From Octopus sinensis (taxonomy: Eukaryota), in contig NC_043001.1 of the NCBI RefSeq assembly GCF_006345805.1, positions 134,478,001 through 134,542,000 of the forward strand: 64,000 bases of DNA, in the 5' to 3' direction. The translations under genes and the position numbers were made by a program. A model generated the notes under the pieces. The model did no database searches, was not told the origin of the DNA, and saw nothing but the letters and a program-made list of their open reading frames with translations. Shown here piece by piece: positions 1-38,080 of this stretch (its first letter is position 1; each line of letters begins with the position of its first letter).

Positions 1-2474
1 AAGGGTAACTTACTGATATGTTTTTAATGAGGCTAAACTAAGCAATCATTAGCCTACTACATAAGGACTTTGATAGGGATCCAAATATAAAGTAAGAACC
101 AGCAAATGAGTGCACGAGTTTAAGGTCAATTGAGTTGAAGAACATTCTGCACCATCTTACGTGATACTTAAGGTTTTCAAAAGCAAACTTATTAAAGACT
201 TAAGTTTTAAGTAGGAAAGATGACAATTGGTGGTAACAGTTTTTCTCCCTATCAGAGTTAAGGGCAGATTCTAGGACTTTTTTAAATTTTGTTAGAACTA
301 TGATGCTGTATGGTAAGTGAAGTATATGCCTCAAATGCAGAGGACTTTAAAGCGCTGATCACAATGTGAAGGAAAGCTTGCAGAAGAGGGATAGCTTTCA
401 AGACAATAGGACAAAATAGTGAAGGCTGATTTACAAGACCGTAACCATACAAAGGTGACAAAAGACCAGTATAGCTGGTGCTATGTAATCGTCAAAATCT
501 TCCACATTGATGAAACAGATTTCTGGAAAAAAAACACTGCATAACACCCCTCCCTCTTCAAGGCATCACCTAACTGCATACTTCAACTTTTCACTACTTG
601 CTACATGGGGTGGGGGAGGAAGGTACTTGTTATCTAGCATTTATTCTATACCACCTTCGCCATATCTTTTAGATTACCCAACTGTATCATCTAACACCAC
701 ACTTTTACAACTCAATCATGTCATTTCTCACTCACCCATCCTAGCCTCCACTTGTTTTACTGTTTTGCTTCTCTTCAACCACCCTACCACATCCCACTGC
801 TGGTCATCTTGTCTTTTCTACCACCCAACTCTTGCATCATTTACCCCCCCCCACAACCGTATCCAATTTCTACAGTCATCACCTACTCTTCCCTACTTAA
901 CATGTGCTCTTTATATTCACTCATCCACTCCCTATCTCTAATCACTCTTCACACTTCCTGTTATCCTCACAAACTAATCCTTATGGGATCTACTTGATAC
1001 CTCATCACATATCTTTCCAACCCTAACTTGGTCATCCTCTTTTCTATGAGTGGCTTACGTAGCTTTGTGGAAAGCTGTTCTGACCCCGTTCTCCACACTT
1101 TAACCCCTCATCTCAAGAGAAGCCACTGACCTGTCTATTCTGGCCCCTCAAAAGGGATTTTAGTCTTGCTGGCTGCATACTGACCTCACTAAAGCTGGTA
1201 CCACGATAAGAGGGGAGGGGGCACTCAGTACACGCAGTAAAGTGGCTGGTATTAGGAAAGTTATCTAACTGTAGAAACCGTCAAAGCAGACGATGAAGCA
1301 CAATGCAGTTTTTGGAACCATTGAATCCTGTTAAACCATTCAACTTATGCAAGCATGGAATACAGACAAATGATTAAGGGAAAAAAGCAGGAAGAAATTC
1401 CATAGTGTACTCACTATAAACTATGGACACAGAAGAAAGACTTCCTCCCGTCCCTCCCCCTTTTGGATACGGAGATTCCGGAAAATTGCCAAAAATCGGC
1501 ATTTTGAAATTTCGGCCCCTTCCTCCTTAATTTCTTCAATTTTCACTTGTTTCCCCTAACCGTAACCCTAAAACCCCAACTGTACTGTAACTACAAAAAT
1601 TTGGGGGAATTTTTTCAGAATCATAATCTCCGTATTTTTCCGCATTTTTTTTTTTTTTTCATTTCTGGAAAAAAATTTACAAAATATTTTTCAGAATCAT
1701 TTTATTTTCCGCATTTTTTTTTTTTTTGGCGGGGGGGATTTGAAAGAGTCCAGAATGAGGTGGGGAGGGCTAATTTCAAAATACCTATTTTTGTCCATTC
1801 GTATTCTCCGTGTAGAAAGTGTTCTTTGGTGGGTACAAACGAAGTCTTGTCGAGAAGAATAGTAGTTTACAGACAGACTAGTTAGTAAGAATTCACGTGA
1901 AAAATTTCTTCAAATACTCAGCTTTTGAAAGCATAATTGTCAGAGAAAGAAGAGGATGACACATTTTCAAGAAGCCTATTTCTGATAGCGACTAATGACC
2001 TTTCAGACTGAAAGGAAAGTTATACTTGTGGTTTGGTATTACTGCATTGTAATAAAAATGTGGGCCCCGAATGCGAAATATTTGCTATGGTTCGAAACAA
2101 TATGCATGGTTTGCTGAATGTGTAATGAAAGACAAATCAACTAAGAGAAAAACTGGAGATAAGAAGCAGACATGGACAAGAGCTGGTATAGGAATGTAAT
2201 ACATATGGAGGGTGGACGAAGTGGTGAAGCTCATGAAGCATGAGGACTGTGACGGTTATGCACGCTAGCAAAACAAGTTATCGAAAATAATAAATTGTGA
2301 AGTGGGTTGGGACGTTTATGCTGTCATAGTCCTGTAAAGTCTCCACTTAATATGGTGATTTAGTGGTTACGATGCTATAACTCTTGAACAGGGTTGTGTG
2401 TTGTATTCAATCAATACCACCATGGAAAGCTAATGTAAAATGATGCATGTATACATACACACGCATTATATTAT

Positions 2475-2745
2475 CACCGTGACCGACCAGACCATCAGAT
2501 GTTGCTACACATCTCTGGTCACAATGCGTTTGCATTGTTTTAGCCTTCGAACGACGCCACCACGCTGGCTAAGCGAGCAGGCCAACAGAAGAAAGAGTGG
2601 TGAAGAGTACAGCAGGGATCACCACCTCCTGTCGGAGCCTCGTGGAGCTTTTTAGGTGTTTTCGCTCAATAAACACACACAACGCCCGGTCTGGGAATCG
2701 AAACCGCGAGTCCGCTGCCCTAACCACTGGGCCATTGCGCCTCTG
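2475..2745 (-). mobile_element. tRNA-derived SINE family B, tail type 2
   Basis: Head GGCGCAATGGCCCAGTGGTTAGGG...TTCGATTCCC; 13-bp TSD CGCATTATATTAT (2462-2474, 2746-2758). Confidence 0.9.
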
Positions 2746-2869
2746 CGCATTATATTATAAAGGAAGTTAATTGATAGTCTTTAGAGCATAGAGTTTAAAA
2801 CAAATCCTACTGGATATTCTGAGTCCAGCTTTTTAAGGTTGAAAGACAAGTTTTGTTATCTGTTCTAGC

Positions 2870-3110
2870 TCTGAGCAGTCTAACTAATGGCTGGACTGCA
2901 ACAGGTTGGTGTGAAGCTGTATAGGCCCCCACATTAGCAGCTTTTCCTTTCGTGGCATAGGAACTTTCCATGCACGAGCTAATGCTTCTTCAAAAGATCT
3001 TGCCCAGGCCTGTCTGTCAATGTTGACTGTGCAGAAGAAGCATAAGGGAACTGGACCGCCAGAGGTTCCAGATACACGATATATTCTTTCACTTGTCTCA
3101 GTCATTGGAC
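2870..3110 (-). mobile_element. Degenerate RTE-X-like LINE 3' remnant
   Basis: KLLMWGP-type C-terminal LINE sequence; low similarity only. Confidence 0.35.
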
Positions 3111-4712
3111 AGTAGCCATGTTGAGATATTGTGTTGATTTGTTGTAAGACTAGGTAAAATTACCCAAAGTGTGGTACACAATTACAATTAATTACATCTC
3201 ATTTTTGTTGATTCACTATATCATAGACATAAACTAACAAATTGTCAAGTGGTTGGTATCCCAAAAGCCAAATTACAATGAGATAAAAACGAAGTATGCA
3301 CACACACACAATGATCACCACCACTACTACTACATTCCATGCACCAATTTCACTAACAAAGCATTAGTCAGTCCAAGGCTATAGCAGAAGACGTTTACCA
3401 AGTTACTATACAGCGGTGCAGCAAAAACCATTTAGTTGCAAAGCAAACCACCTAACCAGAATGTACACTATACACTCAACAATGAGTATACGACCATTTC
3501 TTGTTAACGAGGCGAAGAGCTAAGCCAAGCAGACACTGCCGTCTTTAACCTGACCTATCAAATAGGACACTTTTCAGTTCTAACGCAATATAGAATCATA
3601 GCATTTGGTACTGTGTAGACATGCAAGACCTATGTTTTTGCAAGCGGTTAAGACCAGCCTTAGATCAAGTCACATTTCGAACATTTTAAGGAATCATTGC
3701 TATCTTCAGGGTTTCGTTTTCACATGTCTTAATGTATGAACGCTTCCAGCATATTTTATCTTTCCATAATGCTGTATCAACTGTAATTTCACTTTCTACA
3801 TTAATACTGCTCTTCACATCCTTCCAATAAAATACATGATGCCCCCCCCCCCAACTTGATAAGCTAAGCTTGAAATTTTTGCTGAAAATGGGCTTAATGC
3901 CCCGTTTTGAAAAATAGATAATTTTATGTCATTGAGTCAATAATTGGTAATTTTCCGAAAGCTAACCTGCAACACTAGTCTATCTGCAATTCCATCAAGA
4001 TTTGCATCTCTGGTTAACATACTGCTATGTTAGGATCCATTCGGGGGGGAAGGGGACATGACGTTCACACACGAAACGGAATGGAGAAATTGCATTTTTC
4101 TTGTTCTGCAGATATTTAAAACATCGGAAGTTTCCAGAAAATAAATTCCGTGGTGGTTATCTCAAAACTGCACATGCACACATATGCAGAGAGGGGGAGA
4201 GGGAGAGAGAGAAAGAGAGAGAGAGACGTTGACAATTATATGGGTGAATGAGCGGGTGCGTGTTAGCCTTATTTATAAAGAGTTAATTAATTAGAGTAGT
4301 TTTTAGACAGGAACAATTTGCTGAAAAAGTTGTTTATTGCTTCAAGAAAGATGAAAATGAAAAGGAGGGAACGCAGCTGTTGGAAGTGGTTTAATCATAA
4401 TTTACCCCACGATGGAGCCTTTTATGCGATTGCTTGGTCTGCAACAAATCACACCTTTATCTAAGCACAAGAGAAATTCTGAACGGCATCGAAAAGCCTT
4501 TTTATTACAAGCTGACCAGAACCCCTTTGGACAAAATATCCAGGATAATTTTTAAAAGAAAAATGAACATCTTAAAAACTAACAAATAAGAACACCCACA
4601 AAAAGTCAACTCTCCAAAATGTTCGGTCGAAGTTTATCACCTAGGCGACGTAATCAACATTGGTGGAAGTGGTTAATTAGACTGCAGTAAGACGATGACT
4701 ACTTCACAGAAA

Positions 4713-5097
4713 TCTTTATATATAAAAGTGAAGTTGTGTGTCTGTCTCCTACGATTTAGATTCCTAACTACTCCCACATTTTGCGGTGCAGTTTAACCAA
4801 AACCGGGTATCATAGTCGTGATTCATATCAAGCCCTTCTGGGTATTAGCGCACGTCTACGATGAGTCTACGATTAAAAAAAAAATTACCATCATTTTTTC
4901 CCCCATTTTAATGCATTTTTTTCGCTATTATATAAGGGAAGTAACTCTCTAAAAATGTTTACGATGAGTCAACGATTAAAAAAAAAATTTACCATAATTT
5001 TTTTTCCATTTTAATGCATTTTTTTGGCTATAACTCTAAAAATGCTTATATAGTTATTTCCCTTACAAACCCGAGCAACGCCGGGCGATACTGCTAT
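4713..5097 (+). mobile_element. Non-autonomous Helitron
   Basis: A|TCTTTATATATAAAAG 5' end, GC-rich subterminal hairpin CCCGAGCAACGCCGGG (5070-5085), 3' end CTAT|T (CTAG variant), no TSD, internal ~65-bp direct repeat. Confidence 0.7.
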
Positions 5098-8000
5098 TAC
5101 ATTTATATAAATGGTCTGAGCCCATTTTTAAGGGAACCTTGTGTGAGCGAAGTATGTTCGCAGTTGTATTCTAAAAAAATTAGCCATGACAAAATTTGTT
5201 TCAATAGCCATACTACTACTACTACTGTATTAATATTTTCTTCCAATGCACTGAATATATTTAAAATAAACGCAACACGTCAGCAATGCACATTTTTTCA
5301 AAAGATGGGAACCTCGAAGTAAAAACCGCGTAACTGTTAATGAGGACCGACGGGCTTCTAAATATGCATAACTGATATAATAATCGATATATTTAAATGG
5401 AAACACACATTTTCTATATTTCAAGACGTGCAAAGCCTTGCGAGTGGTTTTGGTAGACAAAAACGAAATACACACACACACCTGTCGCACGCGCCTTTTG
5501 TCAAGACATCACGATAGTAATGAGTATCACCGTTGTACAAGCGGGGTTAGTTTCCAGTCTTCCGTGAAAGACACGCCCGACCATGGGGAAACATTACGGA
5601 CGTGAAATCGATGATGAAACACGACATCTGCAAGAATGCAATTGTTTCTAGCATAGACTCAGGGTTTGCAATTTGAGGAAAAGAACCAGCCATTATTACT
5701 ACGATTCGGCCTCAGTAGTTGACTATCAATAATACCGAAGGGACTTATGACCTCAACAGGATTTGAACTCAAAACGAAATGTACCGAAAGTAATAAAATG
5801 AGTAACAAAAACGTAATAAAATTGAGTAACAAAAACAGGAATATTTTTTTCGGCAAATAAATTTAATTATTGTAATTAGGAATAAAAAACACATTAAGTA
5901 GAAATACTGCAATTAAAATAAAAATTATTTAATGAGCTGCAATCTACACAATCCGGATTCAGCTTGCCGATTACAACAACCATCATTATTTACGTCACAA
6001 GCGACATTGAGGAAGAGACATGACAACCCATCCCTGCTACGTGCGGATACACACACAGCGACAAGAAACGCAGAAAACAGTCGCTCATTTTAAGTTTTTT
6101 ATTTTTTCTTCTGCGCATGCAGAGGAAAAAGGGAAGAGAAACGAGGCCGCCAGGTTGGCACAGAGTCGTAAGAGCCGAAAGACAAATTGCGTTGTGGTTA
6201 CAGTTCCCGGTTCAACGCTCCGACGTGAAACTTCTCCGTTCATCCTTTCGGGATCGACAAATAAAGTACAATTCCTGAAATAATTATTCTCTAACCTCCA
6301 CTTTAATTAAAAAAAAAAAAAAAAAAACATACACACTATGGCGGTGCCCCAGCATGGCCACAGCTCAAGAGCTGAAACTGGAAAACAAACTATCTCCTTA
6401 GAAAATGGGCTTCACCAGGTCTAAGAATGGGTGGAGGTATAAAGGACATTGACCGCACCCACTATCGTATTTTGTTCTTGCTTTTTTTCTACAGAAACCC
6501 ACTTTTTCGACTGCGGAGATTCCGAACTTGAAAAAAAAAAACCGCATTTCAAAATTTCGGTTTGGCTGTTCTTTCTAGCTTGTCGGACTTTCCTGTTAGA
6601 GCGTATTTAGAAATTGAAGACTTTGAAAAACCCCAAAACAAGTTCTCAAAATGTCCCTATGACATGATAGTATAACATTGGAATAGTCTAAATGAATTAG
6701 TGAGAAATATTTTATTCTTTAAAAAGGTTCCAGTCATGTACAAAATGGTCAGTTACGTCAGACAAATAATGTCTATCAGAAATCTATATCTGGATTCCGA
6801 CCGACGTGTCGAATGCAAAAGAACTATTTGATTCTTCCAAATAACGATAATTATCATGAATTTTATAAGGGCTTTGTTTTTATTTGAAAATAATGTCGAA
6901 ACAGGGAATGACATATACGAAATGTTTTATTTTCTGAAGATGAAATATTAATTTATTTTCTACAACCAACAGTTCCCATAGATTCCTTTTTAAAGTACCT
7001 TCAAACGGGGAGGACCTGGTGGTAGTGTTAAGGTGGGTTAGCGGATTAAGTTTACCCACTAAGTAAATATTCAGGACGTAGAATCGAACAAAATACTCAA
7101 GCGTATCAGGTTCGACGTTCTAACCGACCTTCACCAACCCACAGCTCTGGGTTGTACGATTTTATCGACCTCTCAAAGGGCGATAGCAATGCTGACCGCG
7201 GTAGGATTTGAACTTAGTGCACCACCTAATCAAATATATATATTAGCATAATTATTCTAATGTACGTAAGGGTTATTTTCCAGTGTTCATATCGATATAC
7301 GAACCATTTTCATGTTCGAGCTCTCTGCTAAAATGTTCCTAATTTAGACTCAAGACCAGCAATTTTAATGGATAGCTAGATTGATACTCCGAGTGAAGAT
7401 GAAAGACAAAGCTAACATCAGCGAGATTTAATCTCATTTTTGCCGACGCCCTAACGATTGTCATCTCACAGCCTAATCTGACTTGGTACTTTATTTTATC
7501 GACCCCGAAAGGAAGGGAATGTTTCCCTCAGCGGAGTTGGAGCTCAGAGCAAGAAACTGCCATTAAAATTTCATCCGATGTGTTGACGATTTGGCACTGT
7601 CATGATGATATTAGCTGCCAGAAGTGATTTTACTTGCCTCCCGGACGACGATGGATGAAGGGGACAATTGCAGCAAAGATATTATAATGTGGGGAGTTTA
7701 AATGAATCGACTATCTAATTAGTCTTTATCTAATTAAAGAGATGTAATAAGTGATAATGAATCATGACGATGCAAGATCGTAATATCACCCTGAAGACCA
7801 AGGACAAATGAATGCCCTCTCTGTCTTACAAGCAGGTGTATTATACTCAAGACTCTCCCACCCGTTAATAAAATCACGTACGGATAGCAGCACCTCCTCT
7901 CAAAGTGGACAAAGGGAAAAAAATGCCTGTCCTCAGCTTTTGCAAACATCTAGCACAACCTTTTTCACATACAGCCAAACCGCCATAAAAATTTTTTTTA

Positions 8001-8329
8001 AATCACCCAAACCCTTGTCCGGGTAAAAGGAAGGTGGTGAATGAACTGTTACTATGTCGAGATTGTAATGTGGGGGGGGACAATGTTTTTCATACAGACA
8101 ACCCAGCAGTAAGTAGCCCACACCTGCCAGTCTCCCTACCCCTCCCCGTCAATGGTTGCCTGATTGAATGAAAGGCAAGGGTCGATATGGCCGGGCATCG
8201 ACCAGAGAGAGAGCAGTTACACACGTTGTTCAAAAAAGCTGAAATGGGAGGGAAAAAAAAACCCGCCGCCAATCTACCGCCCTTTTAACAGGTGGGATTG
8301 CATGGGTAATAGATTTACACACACACATG

Positions 8330-8343
8330 TACATATCATATAC

Positions 8344-8382
<39 letters not shown>

Positions 8383-8397
8383 AACCTGTATGTATGA

Positions 8398-8428
<31 letters not shown>

Positions 8429-8489
8429 TTCATAAACTTGTATGGTGTATATATATATATTTCATAAACCTGTATGTATGATGTGTGTG

Positions 8490-8532
<43 letters not shown>

Positions 8533-8590
8533 CATACACATCTATATATACACACACACATCATACATACAGGTTTATGAAATATTCATA
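8330..8590. repeat. Compound (TA)n/(TG)n satellite with tandem and inverted units
   Basis: Unit ATAAACCTGTATGTATGATGTGTGTG occurs about three times forward and once inverted (~8550-8580). Confidence 0.85.
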
Positions 8591-9541
8591 CCGTAATAAA
8601 TTACATGTATAGACATTTTATGCTAATAATAAAAGGAGTCATACTATATATATATATAAAATATGTGGAGTCATAAGCATATATTAATGTACGTGTTGTG
8701 TGTGTGTGTAAGACTGGGATATTTTTAAGCTTAGAAATTTAGTAGTTGCAGAAATGTAATTAGGCATTAATTAATAAAATACAATCAGGTTGATGAAATT
8801 CAATATTTAAAAATTCGATCGCTTCAAACGGAAGACTTAACTGCCATTTCGGAATAATTTAAAAACGTCGAAAGATACAGGTTTTTTTTTTTTTTTAATG
8901 AGCGTCTTTTTTTTTTTTTTTAATTTTAAATGCGTTCCAGCCGTGACTACTACCTTGGCTTTCGAGAAATGTACAATTACAATTCAGTGCTCCCCCCCCC
9001 CCGAGTACCGGAGTTATTACCGTATAGTTTTTTTTTTCAATTTTTTAGAATTAGCTTTGCAATGCTCTAAGAAATTGAGAAACATTTTCCATTTTGAAAA
9101 AAGGTTAACGAAAAATTTGTCTAAATATGCATCTCTATCACAGATGCATTTATATACTATTATGCATAAAACACAGATAATGATGACATACTACACGTAA
9201 TTACACTTAGGCAGATATAAATAATATATTTATATATTAAAAGCAGTCAGTATCACAATAGAGGCGCACATAGGTCTGTTAATTAATTATATGCATAGAC
9301 ACACACAAACATGTATTGATGGATATTTGTAATTATAATTTATAATTCAATTTTGTTATTTCTTCAATATAACAGTTCAACAGAGTACAGGTTAATTCAT
9401 ATGAGAGGGATATTTGGCTACTTTGACTATTATGCTGTTTAACTACAAGGTGAACTCTACTAAAAAGACAGTCACTAATTTGAATCTAAGATAAAAAATA
9501 GCTGAATAGTTTAGAGTAAACTATAGGAAATTCACACAAAA

Positions 9542-9588
<47 letters not shown>

Positions 9589-9681
9589 ATAATATTAGAG
9601 AATAAAGCCAAACTTACAGGGGAAAATGAGATTTAGGATTAAATCCAATTATATAGTATAAATATATGTATATATATATAT

Positions 9682-9990
9682 TATATTAAATTGGAGATAA
9701 AACCACTATTAGGCAAATCAAACAGTGAAAAACATAAGCAAATACATAAAATTAATTTAAAATATAAAGGTTAAAAGTAAAAAATTATTTAAATAATTTA
9801 AACTTATAAATTTTATATAGACAAATATATATATATATGTATATATTTTATTTATTAATTAATTTTTATTTTATTTTATATATCAATAGTACAAAAAGAT
9901 AGACATTATTTTAAAAGATAAAGAGTTTTATATTTTCAATTAATTTTGTTTTTCACTGTTTGATTTGCCTAATAGTGGTTTTATCTCTAA

Positions 9991-9999
<9 letters not shown>
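9682..9999. repeat. Inverted repeat, 53-bp arms with ~210-bp AT-rich spacer
   Basis: 9682-9734 vs 9947-9999, one mismatch; flanked by (TA)n. Confidence 0.85.
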
Positions 10000-10029
<30 letters not shown>

Positions 10030-10575
10030 CCAAATAGAGATGCGTGTGTCTTAGTATATGTGGTAATCTTGCTCACCCATCCTATTAAAAAATACGTTTA
10101 GGTTCGACATAGCTAAAATTTATTTAATAAAAATCTTAAAATAACCTGAATGTAAATAGATAAACCATAATTAAATTTCATATTACACGAAATCATTTGC
10201 AATAAATATATATACGTAGGCATTCGTTTAAATTTCTTTAAATTAAGATAATATCGTTAGACGCCGTTAATTGGATTTTGAATTAAAAGTTCGGAAAAAA
10301 GACAGAAAAGACAGAAAAAAAGACAAAATACTTTCTTTAAAAATGTGGATTAAATATTTTTCATAACCCAGACAATACAACAATAAAATAATTAAATAGA
10401 TATGAAATATTTAATAAGATATAAAGTCTAAATTGAACTCCGGTGGTTGCTTTTGCTCGTCTCAGACACACAACTTGTTGGATTTTTTACCGTTAAATTA
10501 ATGTCGAGCGGGGATTTTTTTTGCGTTTTTTTTCCCTTTTTTCCAACGTTCTTGAGAATAAAAAAGAATATTTAC

Positions 10576-10632
10576 CTTAGCACCAATTTGATTTCCACAC
10601 TGTCCAGCTTGTACGTGTACAATCTCCCTCAT
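10576..10632 (-). CDS. TUBB: Beta-tubulin, coding exon 1 (MREIVHVQAGQCGNQIGAK)
   Basis: Minus-strand ATG at 10632, 57 nt = 19 codons matching the near-invariant beta-tubulin N-terminus, followed by donor AAG|GTAAAT at the canonical phase-0 position after codon 19. Exon 2 (FWEVISDEHG...) not found in 1-10575. Paralogue identity cannot be assigned. Confidence 0.93.
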
Positions 10633-10740
10633 ATTTCTACGATTTTAATAAATTTTTAACGGAACAGGTTAAGTTTGATGTATAACAATGAAATCCCCAA
10701 ACGAGACAAAAGACCTTCAAGCGTTCACTGCGCGTAGCAC

Positions 10741-10777
10741 GACTAAATAAATCGCGTTATACTGCTCCTATTATATA
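10741..10777 (-). promoter_or_regulatory. TATA-like box plus Inr-like core promoter of beta-tubulin
   Basis: Minus strand TATATAA at 10777-10771 and TTAGTC (Inr-like, +1 near 10744) about 33 nt downstream, ~110 nt upstream of the ATG. Confidence 0.45.
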
Positions 10778-10988
10778 TTTACGTATTTAGACGTATAAGA
10801 GCGATATATGTAAATGTATGCGTAAATTTAAATGTATGTGTGTTTATCACTCCGCCTCGATATATATATACACACACACACTTTATTCAAATATATGTGT
10901 GTGTGTGTATGCATGTATGTGTATGTATGTGTGTGTATGTTAGCAACGCCCGCTTCAGAAGCCGCGTTCCAGCTACATTGCTACGCAC

Positions 10989-11002
10989 GTTGCCTAGACA
11001 AC
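10989..11002. promoter_or_regulatory. RFX X-box motif
   Basis: GTTGCCTAGACAAC, close to the X-box consensus GTNRCC-N0-3-RGYAAC; located in the tubulin/PSMG4 intergenic region. Confidence 0.55.
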
Positions 11003-11023
11003 GGGCTATGATGCTCACTCCGC

Positions 11024-11028
11024 ATTGG
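11024..11028 (-). promoter_or_regulatory. CCAAT box (NF-Y-like)
   Basis: ATTGG on plus = CCAAT oriented towards tubulin, 22 nt from the X-box. Confidence 0.35.
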
Positions 11029-11080
11029 TTGATTCTTAACAGCAACGTCATGATGGATATAGAAGTGGGGAACTATTACA

Positions 11081-11094
11081 GTGTCCATGACAAC
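11081..11094. promoter_or_regulatory. Second RFX X-box-like motif
   Basis: GTGTCCATGACAAC, imperfect palindrome resembling GTTGCCATGGCAAC. Confidence 0.4.
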
Positions 11095-11910
11095 AGTTCG
11101 CAGTGCACCCCTTCCTCCCTCTCAATAATTCTTGGAAACATTTGCAGTAATAAATAAATAAAAAACACTCCTGGCTCAAAGCCATGGTGACGACTATCAA
11201 AGTTACTTGTAGGCCAACTCAAAACCAATTTTACTCTTCATTAGTTTATGAATAATAGCAAAATAACCCTTCGTAATATGACAGTTAATACAACTAATTT
11301 ACACGATTATAATTTTTTTAAAGTTCGAACCAGCGAGGGACACATGGTTCCTCGACCTGCTAGAAAAAGCAGCCAAATCACCCCTCTAATCAAACGCAAA
11401 GAAAGAACACGCTAGAGAATATGGTATTGGGTTTCCTGCACAGGGAAAAAGACGTTGGTCACAGCGGGAAAACTTTAATCTTAGGTCTGCTCGAGTAAAT
11501 CTGACCTTGATCTAAATAAAAAGCGGCGGGATAAGAAAAATTATTCTCACCCTCCAAGATGAATAAACTAAATGATTATGTGTGTGTGTGTGTGTACAAT
11601 GTGCTGTTCACTAAATGTTATTCGCAAAATTGGTCTTGACTCTAGACAAAAAGAAGTCCTTTTTGTTTAGAAAATAGTTATCAACCTACGATACAATTTA
11701 TATGAATAGTCTGTGTTAATATTTTGTTTATTTCCTTCAATAACAATAAAGTATTAAAAATATTTATTATACAACGTAATATATTTTCTATCTGGACCGA
11801 CTCAATATACACTTTTCAAATCCAAAATTTCTGCACTTCTGAGCCACCATAGTTTAAAACGTAACCACGTTTAATGAGTGTGTGTTTCTTCGTTTTGAAG
11901 TATTAGAAAA

Positions 11911-12090
11911 ATGCCTGGTATGAATGTGGATCCTTCAGAAAATTGTTTTATCAAAATACATCGGTTTTCAGACAAAATAACGGACACGACGGTTCATTTT
12001 CAAGTCATTCAAATGGCAAACAGCTTCCACATGTGGTTCGGCAGCTCGCCGCGTCTCTCCAACATGGCGGTTGCAATGCAAACTAAATAT
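11911..12090 (+). CDS. PSMG4: Proteasome assembly chaperone 4 (PAC4), coding exon 1
   Basis: AAAAATG start; 60 codons MPGMNVDPSENCFIKIHRFSDKITDTTVHFQVIQMANSFHMWFGSSPRLSNMAVAMQTKY align to human PSMG4 (LHNFSARLWEQLVHFHVMRLTDSLFLWVGATPHLRNLAVAMCSRY, from memory); phase-0 donor TAT|GTGAGT at 12091. Confidence 0.88.
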
Positions 12091-13381
12091 GTGAGTAAAA
12101 TCCTTTCTACTAATACGTACAAGGACTGAATTTTTTTTTGTGGTGCGGGGCTGTAAGTCGATTACATTGACACCACTTTTCAACTAATACTTATTTTATC
12201 GACATCGAAAGAATAAAGGCAAAGCCGACCACGGCGGGGTTCGAACTCAGAATGGAAAGACGGGCGAAATGTTGCTAAATATGTGAATAATATCCGAATT
12301 TAAAATGAAATAACTATATTGCATTATTTTTTAATAATAACATGAAATTTCACATTTAAAATTAACAGAGACTAGATATTGGGGAAAGAAAGATTAATTA
12401 TTAGATATTTTTAATGACTATAAATATATTTGTGAGAAATATATTCTCACAAATCCACAAACTTCCACTGTGGAAATAAATTATGTAAACTGGTATACGG
12501 TACTAGTACCCTGGTATACTTCCTATTTGACACGCTATTTTATATTTTAGTAAGCTTTTTACACTATCTTCGATTTCCTTCTATTGAACCTGGTGTTTCT
12601 AATATTTTAGTTTTTTAGTTTTGTTTGCATGACTTAAGTTTTATATTTCATGTATGAGGGAACCCAAAACAATAAAAACATTTCTTATTCATAAATTATA
12701 AGAAAATCCAATTAAATAACATTCATTTTCGTTTTATTAAAGAGAGGAAAATCTTGGAGCTATTTTCGCGGTTAAGAAGCAGATTGGTGTTTTAAAAAAT
12801 AGTTAATTGACCGGAAGTGATAACAGTGAACTCAGAAAATTTCACGTAAACAATCAATGTAACATAGTCATTGTACAGAACGTGAGTCGACAGGCACACT
12901 GCCATCACTTCCCGCTCTTTCTGTAAAATTTGTGGTGCTGGATTATTGCATTGTTCACGTGACTGTGTTGTCTTATCATGCTTTGACATGCATGACACCA
13001 AATTGCCTTCTCAGTGTCGTCCATTGCTAGGTATAGTACTTTGGGACGGCGTACCTCAGCAGCTATTTCTAAAATACTTTAAATTATCATTAGAATATAC
13101 TATACAACAAGGTACCTATGGAGGCGGCAAAATCATCTGACTGAATACGAGGTGTAGTTTCGATTCCCGGTCAAAGACATTTCGTTTCCTTTAAGCCGCT
13201 CTTAACACCTGATGAAAAGAGAAATAACGCCATTTCACTTCCTGTCCGTTTCTCATCGATAATCAGTTACGATTGTTTTCGCATCTCTCTTGAAATGACT
13301 TTAAAATATCTTGGATTTTTACGGTCCAGACAAAATTTTCAAGTCTAATACCAGAAAGTCCGATTCATTTTGAAGGCGTAA

Positions 13382-13663: not shown

Positions 13664-14525
13664 ATCATCATCATTATCGTTTAATGTCCGCTTTCCATGC
13701 TAGCATGGGTTGGACGTTTCAACTGGGGTCTGGGAAGCCCGAAGGCTGCACCAGGCCAGTCAGATCTGGCAGTGTTTCTACAGCTGGATGCCCTTCCTAA
13801 CGCCAACCACTCCGAGAGTGTAGTGGGTGATTTTATGTGCCAGACGAGGCTGGCGAACGGCCACGCTCTGATGGTGTTTTTTACGTGCCACCGGCACAGA
13901 GGCCAGTCAATGCGGTACTGGCTACGGCCACGTTCGGATGGTTTTCATATGTGCCACCAGCACTGGTACCACAAAACTACAAATTCCATTAGTGTTCATC
14001 GAGTTTGCTTTTGATTTTGTCCATTTTCACTTGCCTCAAGAGGTCTTCACAAGTAGAGTTATGTGTCCCAAGAAGGAAGGTATGCATAGGTGCACTGACT
14101 ACGTTCCAGGTAGGGGCCATGGGTTATGGCCTCACTTGTCCAGCCAGGTCTTCTCACGCACAGCATACTTCCAAAGGTCTCGGTCTCTGGTCATTTCCTT
14201 GGTGAGACTTTTCACACAACTATCTTCATCCATTCTTACTACGTGTCCATACCAGCGTAGACGCCTCTCTTGCACACCACATCTGATGCTTCTTAGGTCC
14301 AACTTTTCTCTCAAGGCACTTACACTCTGTCTGGTATGAACACTGACATTACACATCCAACGGAGCATACTGCTTCATTTCTTGCAAGCTTACGCATATC
14401 CTCAGCAGTCACGGCCCATGTTTCACTGCCATGTAGCATGGCTGTTCGCACACATGCGTCATACAGTCTGCCTTTTACTCTGAGCGAGAGGCCTTTTGTC
14501 ACCAGCAGAGGTAAGAGCTCTCTGA
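13664..14525 (-). mobile_element. RTE-clade LINE 3' fragment with (GAT)n tail
   Basis: KGRLYDACVRTAMLHGSETW and RRLRWYGHVVRMDED motifs, a frameshift and an internal deletion, then the shared 3'UTR ending CCAACCCATGCTAGCATGGAAAGCGGACATTAAACGAT... Confidence 0.88.
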
Positions 14526-16149: not shown

Positions 16150-16369
16150 GCGGTGAGCTGGCAGAAACGGTAGCACACCGGGCGAAATGCTTTGCGGTAT
16201 TTCGCCTGCCGCTACGTTCTGAGTTCAAATTCCGCCGAGGTCGAATTTGCCTTTCATCCTTTCAGGGTCGATTAAATAAGTACCAGTTACGCACTGGGGT
16301 CGATATAATCGACTTAATCCGTCTGTTTGTCCTCTCTGCGTTTAGCCCCTTGTGGGTAGTAAAGAAATA
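16150..16369 (+). mobile_element. tRNA-derived SINE family D
   Basis: GGCGGTGAGCTGGCAGAA...GTTCAAATTCC...GCCTTTCATCCTTTCAGGGTCGAT...AAAGAAATA; 13-bp TSD GGTATCATGAAAG. Confidence 0.9.
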
Positions 16370-17720: not shown

Positions 17721-18122
17721 AAGAAGTAGCTGTGTGGTAAGTAGCTTGCTTACCAACCACATAGTTCCGGGTTCAGTCCCACTGCATGACACCTTGGGCA
17801 AGTGTCTTCTACTATAGCCTCGGGCCAACCAAAGCCTTGTGAATGGATTTGGCAGACGGAAACTGAAAGAAGCCCATCGTACATATGTATATATATGTGT
17901 GTGTTTGTATGTCTGTGTTTGTCCCCCCAACATCGCTTGACAACCGATGCCGGTGTGTTTACGTCCCCGTAACTTAGCGGTTCGGCAAAAGAGACCGATG
18001 GACTAAGTACTAGGCTTACAAAGAATAAGACCTGGGGTCGATTTGCTTGACTAAAGGCGATGCTCCAGCATGGCCACAGCCAAATGACTGAAACAAGTAA
18101 AAGGGTAAAAAAAGAAAAGAGA
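17721..18122 (+). mobile_element. tRNA-derived SINE family A
   Basis: Head GTGGCTGTGTGGTAAG...GGGTTCAGTCCC (A/B boxes), CCTTGGGCAAGT motif, internal (TA)(TG) tract, tail GACTGAAACAAGTAAAAG. Confidence 0.88.
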
Positions 18123-20039: not shown

Positions 20040-21400
20040 TTGATGTAAACAATGTCTTTGAAATTATGTTTGCAGGCTATCCTTGTAGCTAAACTACTTG
20101 CCTACGGTTTCCATCTGTCTCTCATCTCCTGGATCGATAATTTCCTGTCAGCATGTAGTGATGGATCTCTCTTAGATCCACACTCTATAAGTTTTGGTGT
20201 GTCCAAAGTTCAGCTTTGTCCCCCTTTTCTTGTACATCAAGTCTACTCCTATACTTATGATACCACTTATCACTATTTCTAAGCCTTCTCCACATAAGCC
20301 CTATCTACATGCAACCTATACACTTCACACCAAACCTGCCTCCATGAACAAAGACTTCCAAAACATTCTCCAATGGAGTCTTTTCCAACAGTACAAAGAC
20401 AGTCCCTGCACACATCAAGGAAATGCCTTTGTATTCCCTCACCACCAATATATAAACAACATGTGTCTAAAAACCTTTAGATTACTACAAATATTAGAAG
20501 ACCAGGCAGGACAAGTGAGCCCAGCCCACTTATGCATGCCTTTCCTCCCTTGGACACACAAAGACCTGTTGAGGCAAGCGAAGTCGATATCGAACCTCAT
20601 CCGACAACAGGCACCCATGCCAACCCCCTTTGCTTGCGAAGACCTGTTGGGGCAAGTGAAATCGGAATCGAAATTGAACCAATCCTATGACTGGCACCCG
20701 GCAGATGCCAGGACCCCTAGACTGGTGGTACGTAAAAAGCACTATCCGAATCGTGGCCGATGCCAGCGCCGCCTCGACTGGCTTCCGTGCCGGTGGCACG
20801 TAAAAAGCACCCACTACACTCACGGAGTGGTTGGCATTAGGAAGGGCATCCAGCTGTAGAAACATTGCCAGATAAGACTGGAGCCTGGTGCAGCCTTCTG
20901 GCTTCCCAGATCCCCAGTCGAACCATCCAACCCATGCTAGCATGGAGAACGGATGTTAAACGATGATGATGATGATGATGATATTTCTAAAGATCTCTCC
21001 TGGTAATCTCAGTATAACAGCCTGCATCTCAGAGACTAGCCTTCCATTTCAGAACCAGAAAATGCTTCAGTTCCTAACACTTACTAGCTCTGTATAAAGC
21101 TCAAATGAGATCTTCAATAAAATTAAATTTTGGACAGTGTTGCTGTTAAACATGTGATCATCTTAGGCCTCTTCCAATAAAAGTTACCTATCTAATTAAC
21201 ATAGAGTCACTCATTAGCACATTCCAACCTCTAGCCTACAAACATGCTGTCTCCTCTCACAGCTTTTTCCACTGCTCTTCAGGTCCGGTTGCTCTTATAC
21301 CTCCACTCATGTCTATCCAACCCATTTGCCTCTTCTTTTAGCACCCACTTTGTGTCCATCACCTACCACAGTCCTCATTACATAGGAAACCAAAACTACA
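20040..21400 (+). mobile_element. Old L2/CR1-group LINE RT remnant, interrupted at ~20505-20982
   Basis: KLLAYGFHLSLISWIDNFLS...SISFGV before the insertion and ISKDLSW-like sequence resuming after it; heavily degenerate. Confidence 0.55.
20505..20982 (+). mobile_element. RTE 3'UTR fragment with (GAT)n tail nested in the L2-like remnant
   Basis: Same 3'UTR as 13664-14525 (GGCACGTAAAAAGCACCCACTACAC...CCAACCCATGCTAGCATGG...GATGATGAT). Confidence 0.85.
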
Positions 21401-23451: not shown

Positions 23452-23780
23452 CAAGGACACATTTGATAGTGTTGTCTTAGATACACTATGTCTGAATAAA
23501 AGACAGGATGGTTAAGGTTGAAACACCTTTCATTAGGGATAGGAAATGTCATTTTGTGTTGAAAGGACACATTGAAGTTACCTGTCATATGACGACTGCA
23601 TTTGTTTAAAAATCTTTACACTGCCCAAGAGTTTTGGCATAAGCATTCTCATTGTTACTCTTTCTTTCTTCAGATTTCTGTTTTTAAACACAATTATAAT
23701 GACTTAAAACAAATAATTACAATTATAGATAAAGAAATATAATTAGTACTTCTAAAATTTACAATTTATTTTAAAAGATA

Positions 23781-24180
23781 AGCAGGAGTGGCTGTGTGGT
23801 AAGTAACTTGTTTACCAACCACATGGTTCCGGGTTCAGTCCCACTGCGTGGCACCTTGGGCAAGTGTCTTCTGCTATAGCCTCGGGCCGACCAAAGCCTT
23901 GTGAGTGGATTTGGTAGACGGAAACTGAAAGAAGCCCGTTGTATATATGTATATATATGCATGTGTGTGTTTGTGTGTCTGTTTGTCCCCCTAGCATTGC
24001 TTGACAACCGATGCTGGTGTGTTTATGTCCCCGTTACTTAGCGGTTCGGCAAAAGAGACCGATAGAATAAGTACTGGGCTTACAAAAGAATAAGTCCCGG
24101 GGTCGAGTTACTCGATTAAAGGCGGTGCTCCAGCATGGCCGCAGTCAAATGACTGAAACAACTAAAAGAGTAAAGAGTAA
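23781..24180 (+). mobile_element. SINE family A
   Basis: Full-length copy with (GTAAAGA)n tail. Confidence 0.9.
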
Positions 24181-25064: not shown

Positions 25065-25450
25065 GGCGCAGGAGTGGCTGTGTGGTAAGTAGCTTGCTAA
25101 CCAACCACATGGTTCCGGGTTCAGTCCCACTGCGTGGCATCTTGGGCAAGTGTCTTCTTCTATAGCCCCGGGCCGACCAGTGCCTTGTGAGTGGATTTGG
25201 TAGACGGAAACTGAAAGAAGCCTGTCGTATATATGTATATATATATATGTGTATGTGTGTCTGTGTTTGTCCCCCTAGCATTGCTGGTGTGTTTATGTCC
25301 CCGTCACTTAGCGGTTCGGCAAAAGAGACCGATAGAATAAGTACTGGGCTTACAAAGAATAAGTCCCGGGGTCGAGTTGCTCGATTAAAGGCGGTGCTCC
25401 AGCATGGCCGCAGTCAAAATGACTGAAACAAGTAAAAGAAAAGAAAGAAA
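25065..25450 (+). mobile_element. SINE family A
   Basis: Full-length copy. Confidence 0.9.
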
Positions 25451-26689: not shown

Positions 26690-27113
26690 TACTCTCTCTT
26701 TACTCTTTTACTTGTTTCAGTCATTTGACTGCGGCCATGCTGGAGCACCGCCTTTAGTCGAGCAAATCGACCCCAGGACTTATTCTTTGTAAGCCTAGTA
26801 CTTATTCTATCAGTCCCTTTTGCCGAACTGCTATGTTATGGGGACATAAACACACCGGCATTGGTTGTCAAGCGATGTTGCGGGGACAAACACAGACACA
26901 CAAACATATAAACACACATACATATATACATATATGTATATACATATATACGAAGGGCTTCTTTCAGCTTTCGTCTACCAAATCCACTCACAAGGCTTTG
27001 GTCAGCCCGAAGCTATAGTAGAAGACACTTGCCCAAGGTGCCATGCAGTGGGACTGAACCCGGAACCATGTGGTTGGTAAGCAAGCTACTTACCACACAG
27101 CCACTCCTACGCC
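26690..27113 (-). mobile_element. SINE family A
   Basis: Full-length copy, reverse orientation. Confidence 0.9.
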
Positions 27114-32567: not shown

Positions 32568-33322
32568 ACCTGAATATAAACAGCCAACAGCAGTTTGGCT
32601 GCTGCCCCACCAGTTCTACTCTTCAATGCAATTCCTTAAATAATATCTAATAATAAACTGGTTTTTCTGTAGGCTTACTGGTGATTTCATGCATATTTCT
32701 GTTATTGATCTGAACTGTATGTGATTATCAATCACAATACTGCACTACTGGATAGACATGTCAACAATTGTATGGATCAATCAACTGTTATTACACATAA
32801 CGAGAGAGAGCTGTGTGTGTGAGAGAGAGATTGGATAACAAAGTAACATATCAGTGCAACTGAAAAGAAGGAATGCCTTAAGAGCCAGTCCATGACTTGC
32901 TCAAGTAGCACCATCATCATGACCATTATTATCACCACTGCCACCACCACCATCATCATTCATCATCATCATCATCATCATCATCACTACTAATACTACA
33001 CATCACTTTCATCATTATTGCAATCATCACCACTATCATCATTGTCATCAGCAGCAATTTGGTTAACTTCTATTTTTCTCTCTCTCCATCCTTGTACAGA
33101 TAAGATGACTGTGTCGGCTCAGATTTATCATCATAGCTTAGGAGATGAGAGAGAGAGACACACACACACAAACAGAGAATAATGATCTACAGTGGCATGC
33201 TTTTGCCAAACATAGGAAATCTAGAGGTGGGAAATGCCAAAGTAGTGTAGGATAAAGACAGAAATAGTGAAACATAGAAAACTGGAAGTATTGATAGAAA
33301 ATGAATAGAGAAAGATAAAAGA

Positions 33323-33475
33323 ATGCTGTGTGGTAAGTAGCTTGCTTATGAACCACATGGTTTCGGGTTCAGTCCCACTGCGTGGCACCTTGGGCAAGTG
33401 TCTTCTGCTATAGCCTCGGGCCGACCAAAGCCTTGTGAGTGGATTTGATAGACGGAAACTGAAAGAAGCCCATTG

Positions 33476-33514
<39 letters not shown>

Positions 33515-33720
33515 TTGTGTGTCTGTATTTGTCCCCCCCCCCAACATCGCTTGACAACCAATGCTGGTGTGTTTACCTCCCCATAACTTAGCAGTTTGGC
33601 AAAAGTGACCGATAGAATAAATACTAGGCTTACAAAGAATAAGTCCTGTGGTCGTGTTGCTCGACTAAAGGTGGTGCTCCAGCATGGCCACAGTGAAATG
33701 ACTGAAACGAGTAAAAGAGT
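33323..33720 (+). mobile_element. SINE family A
   Basis: Near full-length copy. Confidence 0.88.
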
Positions 33721-36051: not shown

Positions 36052-36242
36052 TTTGGCACGTAAAAAGCACCCACTACACTCACGGAGTGGTTGGCGTTAG
36101 GAAGGGCATCCAGCCGTAGAAACACTGCCAGATTTGACTGGGCCTGATGAAGCCTTCTGGCTTCACAGACCCCAGTAGAACCGTCCAACCCATGCTAGCA
36201 TGGAAAACGGACGCTAAATGATGATGATGATGATGATGATGT
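36052..36242 (+). mobile_element. RTE 3'UTR fragment with (GAT)n tail
   Basis: Same family 3' end. Confidence 0.85.
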
Positions 36243-37674: not shown

Positions 37675-38080
37675 AGGTGCAGGTGTGGCTGTGTGGTAAG
37701 AAGCTTGCTTCCCAACCACACGGTTCCGGGTTCAATCCCACTGCGTGGTACCTTGGACAAATGTCTTCCACTATAGCCTCGGACTGACCAAAGCTTTGTG
37801 AGTAGATTTGGTATGTGGAAGCTGAAAGAAGCCTGTCATATAAGTGTGTGTGTGTGTCTGTGTGTGTGTCTTGTGTCTGTGTTTGTTTTCCCATCATTAC
37901 TTGACAACTGGTGTTGGTGTGTTTACATCCTTGTAACTAAGTGGTTTGGCAATAGAGACTGATAGAATAAGTACTAGGCTTAAAAAATAAGCCCCGGGGT
38001 CAAATTGTTCAACAAAAATACTTCAAAACGGTGCTCCAGCATGGCCACAGTGAAATGACTGAAACAAATAAAAGAATAAA
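37675..38080 (+). mobile_element. SINE family A (older subfamily)
   Basis: Diverged copy with CpG decay. Confidence 0.82.

What the first reader, a model, noticed from the sequence alone, without database searches (positions are those of the whole stretch)
10576..12090. Head-to-head beta-tubulin / PSMG4 pair, the same arrangement as human TUBB2B-PSMG4
Seen: beta-tubulin exon 1 (minus) and PSMG4 exon 1 (plus) diverge with ATGs only ~1.28 kb apart. Established (from memory): in human 6p25 TUBB2A/TUBB2B on the minus strand are followed directly by PSMG4 on the plus strand. Inference: the pair has been linked since the bilaterian ancestor, despite extensive cephalopod genome rearrangement. That would point to a shared bidirectional promoter coupling microtubule supply to 20S proteasome assembly.
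Basis: partly seen in the sequence, partly recalled or inferred. Interest (0 to 1): 0.8.

Follow-up and report, generated by a model that had tools for sequence, protein, structure and literature searches.

The report
Ancient head-to-head tubulin–PSMG4 gene pair
The first exons of a beta-tubulin gene and of the proteasome assembly chaperone PSMG4 point away from each other 1.28 kb apart, and the same arrangement occurs in a nemertean, a gastropod, a crinoid, a shark and a gar, so it is an old conserved gene pair, with no evidence yet that the two functions are coupled.

Summary
Beta-tubulin exon 1 lies at 10632..10576 (minus) and PSMG4/PAC4 exon 1 at 11911..12090 (plus). Both have intact splice donors at intron positions shared with vertebrates, and the two ATGs are 1278 bp apart.

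I sampled PSMG4 neighbours in 12 other loci. A divergent beta-tubulin is the upstream neighbour in six:
- the window's closest relative, L007 (1266 bp)
- Tubulanus (401 bp)
- Gigantopelta (3.7 kb)
- Anneissia (4.1 kb)
- gar (1.8 kb)
- elephant shark (7.8 kb)

An oyster, the coral Acropora and one unidentified contig have a different neighbour. A sea cucumber and a sea anemone were inconclusive, because no gene was called within the 10 kb fetched. One further contig was transcript-like and uninformative.

The pair therefore most likely dates to the protostome–deuterostome ancestor. It is a new example of a known class, the conserved ancestral microsyntenic pairs in 5'-5' orientation.

Synonymous sites between the window and L007 are saturated, yet a ~110-bp module survives in the spacer: X-box-like site, CCAAT, CRE half-site, then an exact 18-mer. 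This argues for a constrained shared regulatory region.

The transcription start sites and the organism could not be determined. The rest of both genes lies outside the window or was not detected.

The parts
10576..10632 (-). Beta-tubulin coding exon 1 (MREIVHVQAGQCGNQIGAK). ATG at 10632-10630, GT donor at 10575/10574.
   Evidence: Sequence. tblastn 18/19 identity to TUBB2B, E=7e-7. Versus L007 exon 1: 4 synonymous and 0 non-synonymous differences. The intron after codon 19 is shared with gar, Tubulanus, L007 and Anneissia.
10633..11910 (.). Divergent intergenic spacer between the two ATGs, 1278 bp. It carries none of the three interspersed repeat families found elsewhere in the window.
   Evidence: The L007 spacer is 1266 bp. 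GC peaks at 0.465 in 10900-11099, against 0.13-0.35 in the flanks.
10771..10777 (-). TATA-like TATATAA on the tubulin strand, about 140 nt upstream of the tubulin ATG. Candidate tubulin core promoter (inference only).
   Evidence: Read from the sequence. L007 has an (AT)n/TATA-rich stretch at the aligned position. No TSS data.
10989..11002 (.). X-box-like inverted repeat GTTGCCTAGACAAC, 11/12 to GTNRCC N1-3 RGYAAC.
   Evidence: It is the only site with at most 1 mismatch in the spacer (expected 0.18). L007 has its only such site, GTCGTCATAGTAAC, at the aligned position 9007. Consensus taken from bioRxiv 10.1101/2021.02.03.429678.
11024..11028 (-). CCAAT box (ATTGG on the plus strand), 35 bp from the X-box-like site in both the window and L007.
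   Evidence: window 10989->11024; L007 9007->9042.
11045..11050 (-). CRE/ATF half-site TGACGT. L007 has a full palindromic TGACGTCA in the same order.
   Evidence: window 11045; L007 9058; order seen in the alignments.
11069..11102 (.). Conserved non-coding block containing the exact 18-mer GTGTCCATGACAACAGTT (11081-11098). It is a second, weaker X-box-like inverted repeat, 10/12 by hand count to the consensus.
   Evidence: blastn HSP of window 11069-11102 against L007 9096-9131: 83% identity, E=9e-5. It is the only significant non-coding match between the two spacers. The 18-mer is exact in both, while synonymous sites are saturated (pS=0.85).
11911..12090 (+). PSMG4 (PAC4) coding exon 1, 60 codons. 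GTGAGT donor at 12091-12096.
   Evidence: Pfam PAC4 E=3.9e-5. Own PSMG4 HMM E=1.3e-26. 65-68% identity to P0123/P0122. pN=0.19 against pS=0.85 versus L007. The intron position after ...KY is shared with shark and gar and is implied by the many read-through '...KYVS' fragments.

Best explanation
The region holds the 5' ends of two real, divergently transcribed genes: a beta-tubulin on the minus strand and PSMG4/PAC4 on the plus strand. [quoted passage not shown]

The most likely reason for its retention is regulatory entanglement. The short spacer carries promoter and enhancer elements that at least one, and probably both, of these essential genes need, so breakpoints between them are selected against.

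In this lineage the functional core is a ~110-bp GC-richer module at 10989-11098. In order, it contains an X-box-like site, a CCAAT box, a CRE half-site and an 18-mer X-box-like palindrome. It sits about 360-470 bp from the tubulin ATG and about 810-920 bp from the PSMG4 ATG.

Shown: the exon identities, the arrangement, its phylogenetic spread, and the conserved module. Inferred: that the module is a shared or bidirectional promoter element, which factors bind it (RFX, NF-Y and CREB/ATF are motif-based guesses), and that selection on it is what keeps the genes together.
For: Exon identities.

Divergent beta-tubulin/PSMG4 pairs, ATG-to-ATG spacers:
- L007 1266 bp, Tubulanus polymorphus 401 bp, Gigantopelta aegis 3738 bp, Lepisosteus 1816 bp, Callorhinchus 7756 bp
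- Anneissia japonica 4063 bp

With roughly 10 beta-tubulin genes among about 20,000 genes, a beta-tubulin as the divergent upstream neighbour has a chance probability of about 2.5e-4 per independent lineage (my estimate). Recurrence in six further taxa cannot be coincidence.

The gar locus has the gene order of human 6p25.

Constraint on the spacer. Between the window and L007, PSMG4 exon 1 has pS=0.85 (saturated) and pN=0.19. The spacers still share an exact 18-mer (HSP E=9e-5) and a collinear set of motifs with the same 35-bp spacing from X-box to CCAAT.

The exact spliced protein of the L007 tubulin gene occurs on 31 short contigs, which is consistent with expression.

The general framework is that ancient 5'-5' pairs with short spacers are retained by cis-regulatory constraint (Irimia et al. 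2012, PMC3514665).
Against: - No transcription start sites, RNA or chromatin data, so 'bidirectional promoter' is not demonstrated.
- The rest of both genes is not in the window. Their integrity here is inferred from purifying selection on the first exons and from L007.
- The pair is broken in Saccostrea (helicase neighbour), Acropora (unrelated 620-aa neighbour) and an unidentified contig L003.
- Spacers of 3.7-7.8 kb, and about 31 kb in human by memory, show that the pair can persist without a compact shared promoter.
- The conserved module was found only in the window and L007. It was absent from the spacers of the other phyla.
- Only 12 loci could be sampled. No arthropod, annelid or amphioxus was included.
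Confidence: 0.7

Rival explanations
1. A shared bidirectional promoter exists in order to co-regulate the two products, functionally coupling microtubule supply to 20S proteasome assembly.
For: The compact divergent arrangement with a conserved module and the very short 401-bp spacer in Tubulanus make some transcriptional co-regulation likely.
Against: - No expression data.
- No paper in the searched library links PSMG4 with tubulin, synteny or a bidirectional promoter.
- The pair tolerates 3.7-7.8 kb spacers.
- Tubulin abundance is largely set after transcription by MREI-dependent autoregulated mRNA decay, and human TUBB2B is neuron-enriched while PSMG4 is broadly expressed (both from memory).
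- Conserved 5'-5' pairs commonly join functionally unrelated housekeeping genes (PMC3514665).
Confidence: 0.1
2. Passive retention. The two genes stay adjacent only because the spacer is a small target for breakpoints, with no selection on a shared element.
For: Spacers are short in several taxa (401-1816 bp). The pair has been lost in some lineages, as expected under slow neutral decay.
Against: Retention of both adjacency and orientation across five phylum-level lineages over more than 500 My is far beyond neutral expectation for gene order. The general argument is in PMC3514665. A non-coding module survives saturated synonymous divergence. Taxa with 4-8 kb spacers still keep the pair.
Confidence: 0.12
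3. One of the two exons in this window is a stranded relic: an orphan first exon of a gene whose remaining exons have been lost or moved. The 'pair' would then not be functional in this organism.
For: Neither tubulin exons 2-4 nor any later PSMG4 exon is detectable in the window. The PSMG4 downstream exons are also missing from the 10 kb fetched for L007.
Against: - Both ORFs are intact and keep canonical donors at conserved intron positions.
- Tubulin exon 1 has 0 non-synonymous changes, and PSMG4 exon 1 has pN much lower than pS, versus L007.
- L007 has a complete tubulin gene.
- The introns are packed with interspersed repeats, which is consistent with very long introns rather than gene loss.
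Confidence: 0.06

Closest known systems
Conserved ancestral microsyntenic pairs (CAMPs) in 5'-5' orientation, e.g. HSPD1-HSPE1 (Irimia et al. 2012, PMC3514665)
   Same: Two unrelated genes, divergent orientation conserved across protostomes and deuterostomes, short spacer in several taxa, conserved intergenic sequence between related species.
   Different: I could not check whether this pair is already in that paper's list, because the supplement is not held. One partner belongs to a multi-copy family whose orthology is hard to resolve. Co-expression is untested. The pair was not found in the two cnidarians sampled, whereas HSPD1-HSPE1 reaches unicellular holozoans and fungi.
Human 6p25 locus BPHL-TUBB2A-TUBB2B-PSMG4-SLC22A23
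   Same: Same order and orientation of tubulin(-) and PSMG4(+). The gar and shark loci have the same flanking MFS gene, and gar also has the same flanking hydrolase gene.
   Different: In human the tubulin is tandemly duplicated and the gap to PSMG4 is tens of kb (from memory), so there is no compact shared promoter. The window has 1278 bp. The downstream neighbour is not conserved outside vertebrates: FAST/RAP-domain protein in Gigantopelta, ribosomal L18A in Tubulanus, aminotransferase in Anneissia.
RFX/X-box regulated promoters, including the X-box + CRE + CCAAT combination of the vertebrate MHC class II SXY module (from memory)
   Same: An imperfect inverted repeat matching GTNRCC N1-3 RGYAAC at 11/12 positions, conserved in position between two deeply diverged sequences, next to a CCAAT box and a CRE-type site.
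   Different: Binding is untested. The order of elements differs from SXY. The strictly conserved 18-mer is only a 10/12 match. No such site was found in the spacers of the other phyla.

Membership tests
Beta-tubulin gene | N-terminal MREI... sequence with near-identity to beta- (not alpha- or gamma-) tubulin | tested here: met
   18/19 identical to TUBB2B. 19/19 identical to exon 1 of the complete L007 beta-tubulin.
Beta-tubulin gene | Conserved phase-0 intron after codon 19 | tested here: met
   AAG|GT at 10576/10575. Same boundary in gar, Tubulanus, L007 and Anneissia.
Beta-tubulin gene | Remaining ~425 codons (GTPase and C-terminal domains) present and intact | not testable with these tools
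   No further tubulin exon lies in window 1-10575, so the gene runs off the left end. An intact gene was seen only in the relative L007.
PSMG4 / PAC4 (Pfam PF16093) | Significant match to the PAC4 profile | tested here: inconclusive
   Pfam E=3.9e-5 but 24 bits, below the 31-bit gathering score, because only profile positions 1-36 of 77 are encoded. The family-specific HMM gives E=1.3e-26. 161 homologues at E<=1e-3 in the representative library.
PSMG4 / PAC4 (Pfam PF16093) | Conserved exon 1 / intron 1 boundary after ...(K/R)(Y/F) | tested here: met
   TKY|GTGAGT at 12090/12091. Same position in shark and gar and in dozens of read-through fragments ending ...KYVS.
PSMG4 / PAC4 (Pfam PF16093) | C-terminal half (...LAxKLAKKxxKQVFVS...P.KF) present | tested here: not met
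   Not detected in 52 kb downstream by tblastn, HMM or regex. The regex recovered the last exon in two positive controls. The most likely reason is a very long, repeat-filled intron.
Conserved ancestral microsyntenic pair (5'-5' CAMP) | Adjacency in both protostome and deuterostome lineages | tested here: met
   Spiralia: window, L007, Gigantopelta, Tubulanus. Deuterostomia: Anneissia, Callorhinchus, Lepisosteus.
Conserved ancestral microsyntenic pair (5'-5' CAMP) | Conserved divergent orientation | tested here: met
   Tubulin(-)/PSMG4(+) in all seven positive loci (same calls).
Conserved ancestral microsyntenic pair (5'-5' CAMP) | Conserved intergenic sequence | tested here: met
   Met only between the window and L007: the 18-mer and the collinear motif module. 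Not found across phyla.
Conserved ancestral microsyntenic pair (5'-5' CAMP) | Correlated expression of the two genes | not testable with these tools
   No expression data available.
Bidirectional promoter (divergent TSSs less than 1 kb apart) | TSS-to-TSS distance below 1 kb | not testable with these tools
   ATG-to-ATG is 1278 bp and the TSSs are unknown. In Tubulanus ATG-to-ATG is 401 bp, so the criterion must be met there unless a 5'-UTR intron intervenes.
RFX X-box element | Match to GTNRCC N1-3 RGYAAC | tested here: inconclusive
   10989-11002 matches 11/12 and is positionally conserved in L007. The 18-mer core matches 10/12 by hand count. The chance of at least one such site per spacer is 0.10-0.15. 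Binding not tested.

The most novel reading that the evidence does not exclude
The beta-tubulin/PSMG4 pair is held together across Bilateria because both genes are driven from one shared regulatory module. In this lineage that module would be an RFX/NF-Y/CREB-type X-box-CCAAT-CRE unit. Tubulin synthesis and proteasome core assembly would then be transcriptionally co-tuned in particular cell types, such as ciliated or neuronal cells. This would be a previously unrecognised regulatory link between cytoskeletal proteostasis and proteasome biogenesis.
Probability: 0.1. Interest if true: 0.7.

Novelty: new member of a known kind. Interest (0 to 1): 0.45.

Why it matters
It adds a clean, easily scored example to the set of gene pairs whose adjacency and orientation have survived since the protostome-deuterostome ancestor. 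The window also supplies a short, sharply defined candidate element (10989-11098) that can be tested directly for bidirectional activity. The tubulin partner is a heavily studied disease gene family in human (TUBB2A/TUBB2B) and PSMG4 is a little-studied proteasome chaperone, so knowing that their linkage is ancient gives a reason to look for shared regulation. The present data do not show any functional coupling.

Tried and rejected
1. Looking for the rest of both genes in the window. I used tblastn with human TUBB2B and PSMG4 and with 260+ PSMG4 homologues, an HMM search of all six-frame ORF pieces, and a regex for the last exon. Nothing was convincing. The recurrent weak hit at 61156-61200 lies in an interspersed repeat, and 34682-34765 has no supporting context.

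2. The search for homologous proteins with exon 1 alone found no word matches. With an invertebrate alignment it returned only 17 proteins.

3. The Antedon PSMG4 look-up failed because there was no exact record.

4. Searching JGI metagenome contigs for the 18-mer gave 22 hits. None carries either exon or more of the module, so they are chance matches.

5. Identifying the organism. Exact look-ups of nine window ORFs found nothing. The L007 tubulin is in the collection but unnamed. The closest PSMG4 relatives, P0122 and P0123, are also unnamed. The cephalopod assignment stays unverified. Named molluscs are only 45-55% identical in exon 1.

6. Cross-phylum search for the 18-mer, X-box, CRE and CCAAT motifs in the other spacers found no shared element. 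Gar has an adjacent CCAAT and TGACGTCA 136-142 bp from its tubulin ATG, which may be coincidence.

7. Literature. No paper in the library connects PSMG4 with tubulin synteny or a bidirectional promoter. The supplement of Irimia et al. 2012, which could list the pair, is not held.

8. A search for an SLC22A23-like gene in the window, using six-frame ORFs from the shark locus, found none.
Full report
**Observation.** Reading window 10300-12400 shows two features.
- On the minus strand, ATG at 10632-10630 opens MREIVHVQAGQCGNQIGAK. It ends at 10576 and is followed by a GT donor at 10575/10574.
- On the plus strand, ATG at 11911 opens a 60-codon frame ending ...AVAMQTKY at 12090, followed by GTGAGT.

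Human PSMG4 hits 11950-12126 at E=3e-11. Pfam assigns the plus-strand exon to PAC4 (PF16093) at E=3.9e-5. The 24-bit score is below the 31-bit gathering cut-off because only the first 36 of 77 profile positions are encoded. An HMM built from 151 PSMG4 homologues gives E=1.3e-26. The spacer between the ATGs is 10633-11910, or 1278 bp.

**What is missing from the window.** No further tubulin exon lies in 1-10575, so intron 1 exceeds 10.5 kb and runs off the left end. No later PSMG4 exon could be detected in the 52 kb downstream. I tried tblastn with more than 260 homologues, an HMM search of all ORF pieces, and a regex that did recover the last exon in two control loci.

The window is otherwise filled with interspersed repeats:
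- one family gives 19 blastn matches (about 11 distinct copies)
- a second gives 22 matches (about 16 or more distinct copies)
- a third begins 40 bp into PSMG4 intron 1, at 12130

It also holds a Mos1-type transposase fragment and microsatellites. Very long, repeat-stuffed introns are the most economical reading.

**Are the exons functional?** The closest relative I could find is L007, an unnamed 335-kb ENA contig reached through protein P0123, which is 65% identical in PSMG4 exon 1. It carries both exons in the same arrangement, with ATGs 1266 bp apart. It also carries a complete, intact 4-exon beta-tubulin gene of 444 codons. The exact protein of that gene occurs on 31 short contigs in the protein collection, which is consistent with spliced transcripts.

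Between the window and L007, tubulin exon 1 has 4 synonymous and 0 non-synonymous differences. PSMG4 exon 1 has pS=0.85 (saturated) against pN=0.19. Both exons are therefore under purifying selection. The two sequences are also very deeply diverged.

The intron positions are shared with vertebrates: after tubulin codon 19, and after PSMG4 ...KY.

**Test of the synteny claim.** I recovered PSMG4 proteins from named taxa. I then looked at 10 kb on each side of the gene (look-up of encoding contigs) and confirmed tubulin identity and ATG positions by tblastn.

A divergent beta-tubulin is the upstream neighbour in:

| Taxon | Locus | ATG-to-ATG spacer |
|---|---|---|
| Callorhinchus milii | L001 | 7756 bp |
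| Lepisosteus oculatus | L002 | 1816 bp |
| Gigantopelta aegis (gastropod) | L004 | 3738 bp |
| Tubulanus polymorphus (nemertean) | L006 | 401 bp |
| unnamed relative | L007 | 1266 bp |
| Anneissia japonica (crinoid) | L011 | 4063 bp |

The gar locus reads Abhydrolase / tubulin / PSMG4 / MFS transporter. This agrees with the run BPHL, TUBB2A, TUBB2B, PSMG4 in a clinical paper's table of human 6p25 genes, which also lists SLC22A23 (PMC7479479).

Loci without the pair:
- True negatives, where another gene is the divergent neighbour: Saccostrea echinata (Ski2/MTR4-type helicase), Acropora digitifera (620-aa protein without a Pfam domain), and the unidentified contig L003 (F-box/LRR-like protein).
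- Inconclusive, with no gene called and no tubulin in the 10 kb upstream: Holothuria leucospilota and Actinostola.

A beta-tubulin as the divergent neighbour has a per-lineage chance of roughly 2.5e-4 (my estimate, from about 10 tubulin genes in about 20,000 genes, times one half for orientation). Its presence in spiralians, an echinoderm and vertebrates is best explained by inheritance from the protostome-deuterostome ancestor, with losses in some lineages. The two anthozoans give no support for an older origin.

**The spacer.** Global and local alignment of the window and L007 spacers shows no general similarity, as expected with saturated synonymous sites. One block stands out: window 11069-11102 against L007 9096-9131, at 83% identity and E=9e-5. 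It contains the exact 18-mer GTGTCCATGACAACAGTT.

Upstream of it the two sequences share the same order of short motifs:

| Element | Window | L007 |
|---|---|---|
| X-box-like inverted repeat | 10989 GTTGCCTAGACAAC | 9007 (GTCGTCATAGTAAC on the other strand) |
| CCAAT on the minus strand | 11024 | 9042 |
| CRE-type site | 11045 (half-site TGACGT) | 9058 (full TGACGTCA) |
| 18-mer | 11081 | 9110 |

The X-box-like repeat is each spacer's only match with at most 1 mismatch to GTNRCC N1-3 RGYAAC. That consensus is quoted from bioRxiv 10.1101/2021.02.03.429678. The expected number per spacer is 0.12-0.18. The CCAAT box lies exactly 35 bp from the X-box start in both sequences.

The module coincides with the GC maximum of the spacer, 0.465 against 0.13-0.35 in the flanks. 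None of the three repeat families surveyed has a copy in the spacer. It lies about 360-470 bp from the tubulin ATG and about 810-920 bp from the PSMG4 ATG.

A TATATAA on the tubulin strand at 10777-10771 is a candidate tubulin TATA box (sequence reading only).

The 18-mer and the strict X-box consensus were not found in the spacers of the other phyla. A scan of JGI metagenome contigs for the 18-mer gave only chance hits.

**Mechanism.** The best-supported account is that this is a conserved ancestral microsyntenic pair in 5'-5' orientation, kept together by cis-regulatory entanglement in a short spacer. This is the class described by Irimia et al. 2012 (PMC3514665). That paper lists the diagnostic features: enrichment and conservation of divergent orientation, short spacers, and conserved intergenic sequence.

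In this lineage the conserved module is the obvious candidate for the constrained element. Whether it drives both genes is inferred, not shown. In Tubulanus, 401 bp between the ATGs leaves little room for anything but a bidirectional promoter.

Nothing supports it:
- No paper in the library links the two genes.
- The pair survives with 4-8 kb spacers.
- Tubulin output is largely set post-transcriptionally via the MREI nascent peptide (from memory).

The identities of the binding factors (RFX, NF-Y, CREB/ATF) are motif-level guesses.

**Comparison and novelty.** The thing works like, and meets the testable criteria of, a 5'-5' CAMP: adjacency in both bilaterian branches, conserved orientation, and conserved intergenic sequence between relatives. 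Co-expression is untestable here. I found no explicit description of this pair, but the supplementary lists of the microsynteny surveys were not available, so it may already sit in a table. It is best filed as a new, or at least undescribed, member of a known kind.

**Limits.**
- Only 12 other loci could be examined, each with 10-kb flanks.
- No arthropod, annelid or cephalochordate was sampled.
- The human intergenic distance is from memory.

Noticed in passing
window 12091-64000: No PSMG4 exon after exon 1 is detectable in 52 kb downstream, nor in the 10 kb downstream of exon 1 in L007. PSMG4 intron 1 must be extremely long for a ~125-codon gene, or the C-terminal half is unusually diverged in this lineage.
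   Followed up: partly
window 13697-13960, 20724-20943, 36054-36201, 42217-42502, 44411-44643, 54256-54600, 59125-59356, 61209-61320 and others: An interspersed repeat family of ~230-345 bp with about 11 copies at 75-94% identity. Its translations (MLAWVGRFDRGSGKPEGC...) create many spurious ORFs and one spurious PSMG4-like tblastn hit near 61156.
   Followed up: partly
window 17722-17943, 23771-24007, 25068-25285, 26910-27108, 33311-33518, 37679-37907, 45252-45480, 63097-63287 and others: A second short interspersed repeat family of ~200-240 bp with 16 or more copies at 78-95% identity. No Pfam domain.
   Followed up: partly
window 12130-12270 (also 16199-16316, 47400-47517): A third SINE-like element starts only 40 bp into PSMG4 intron 1. 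From memory it resembles the tRNA-derived SINE common in octopus genomes, but this could not be checked.
   Followed up: no
window 9682-9737 and 9944-9999: A 56-nt inverted repeat, 96% complementary, with 206 nt between the arms and (TA)n tracts on both sides. It looks like a MITE-type element or hairpin inside tubulin intron 1.
   Followed up: no
window 57174-57476 (+): An ORF fragment with the HTH_48 domain of Mos1/mariner transposases (Pfam E=3.2e-14), a mariner-type transposon remnant.
   Followed up: partly
window 12083-12103 and 12275-12295: The 21 nt spanning the PSMG4 exon 1 donor (CTAAATATGTGAGTAAAATCC) recur at 90% identity 192 bp downstream, with GTGAAT in place of GTGAGT. This is possibly chance, or a decoy or alternative donor.
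   Followed up: no
L002 (gar) 8320-8333: A minus-strand CCAAT box directly abutting a perfect palindromic CRE (TGACGTCA), 136-142 bp upstream of the gar tubulin ATG. The order CCAAT then CRE is the same as in the window/L007 module. It may be coincidence.
   Followed up: partly
L003 (Logan SRR15421486 contig, 4547 bp): An intronless PSMG4 packed between an F-box/LRR-like gene and a large unannotated ORF, with ~180-300 bp spacers. This is either a very compact unidentified eukaryote genome or a chimeric assembly. There is no tubulin neighbour.
   Followed up: no
proteins P0121 and P0125 (representative library): The top-scoring 'hits' to PSMG4 exon 1 include two long internally repetitive proteins (723 and 615 aa, 6-10 matched stretches). 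These are low-complexity or repeat artefacts, not PAC4 homologues.
   Followed up: partly
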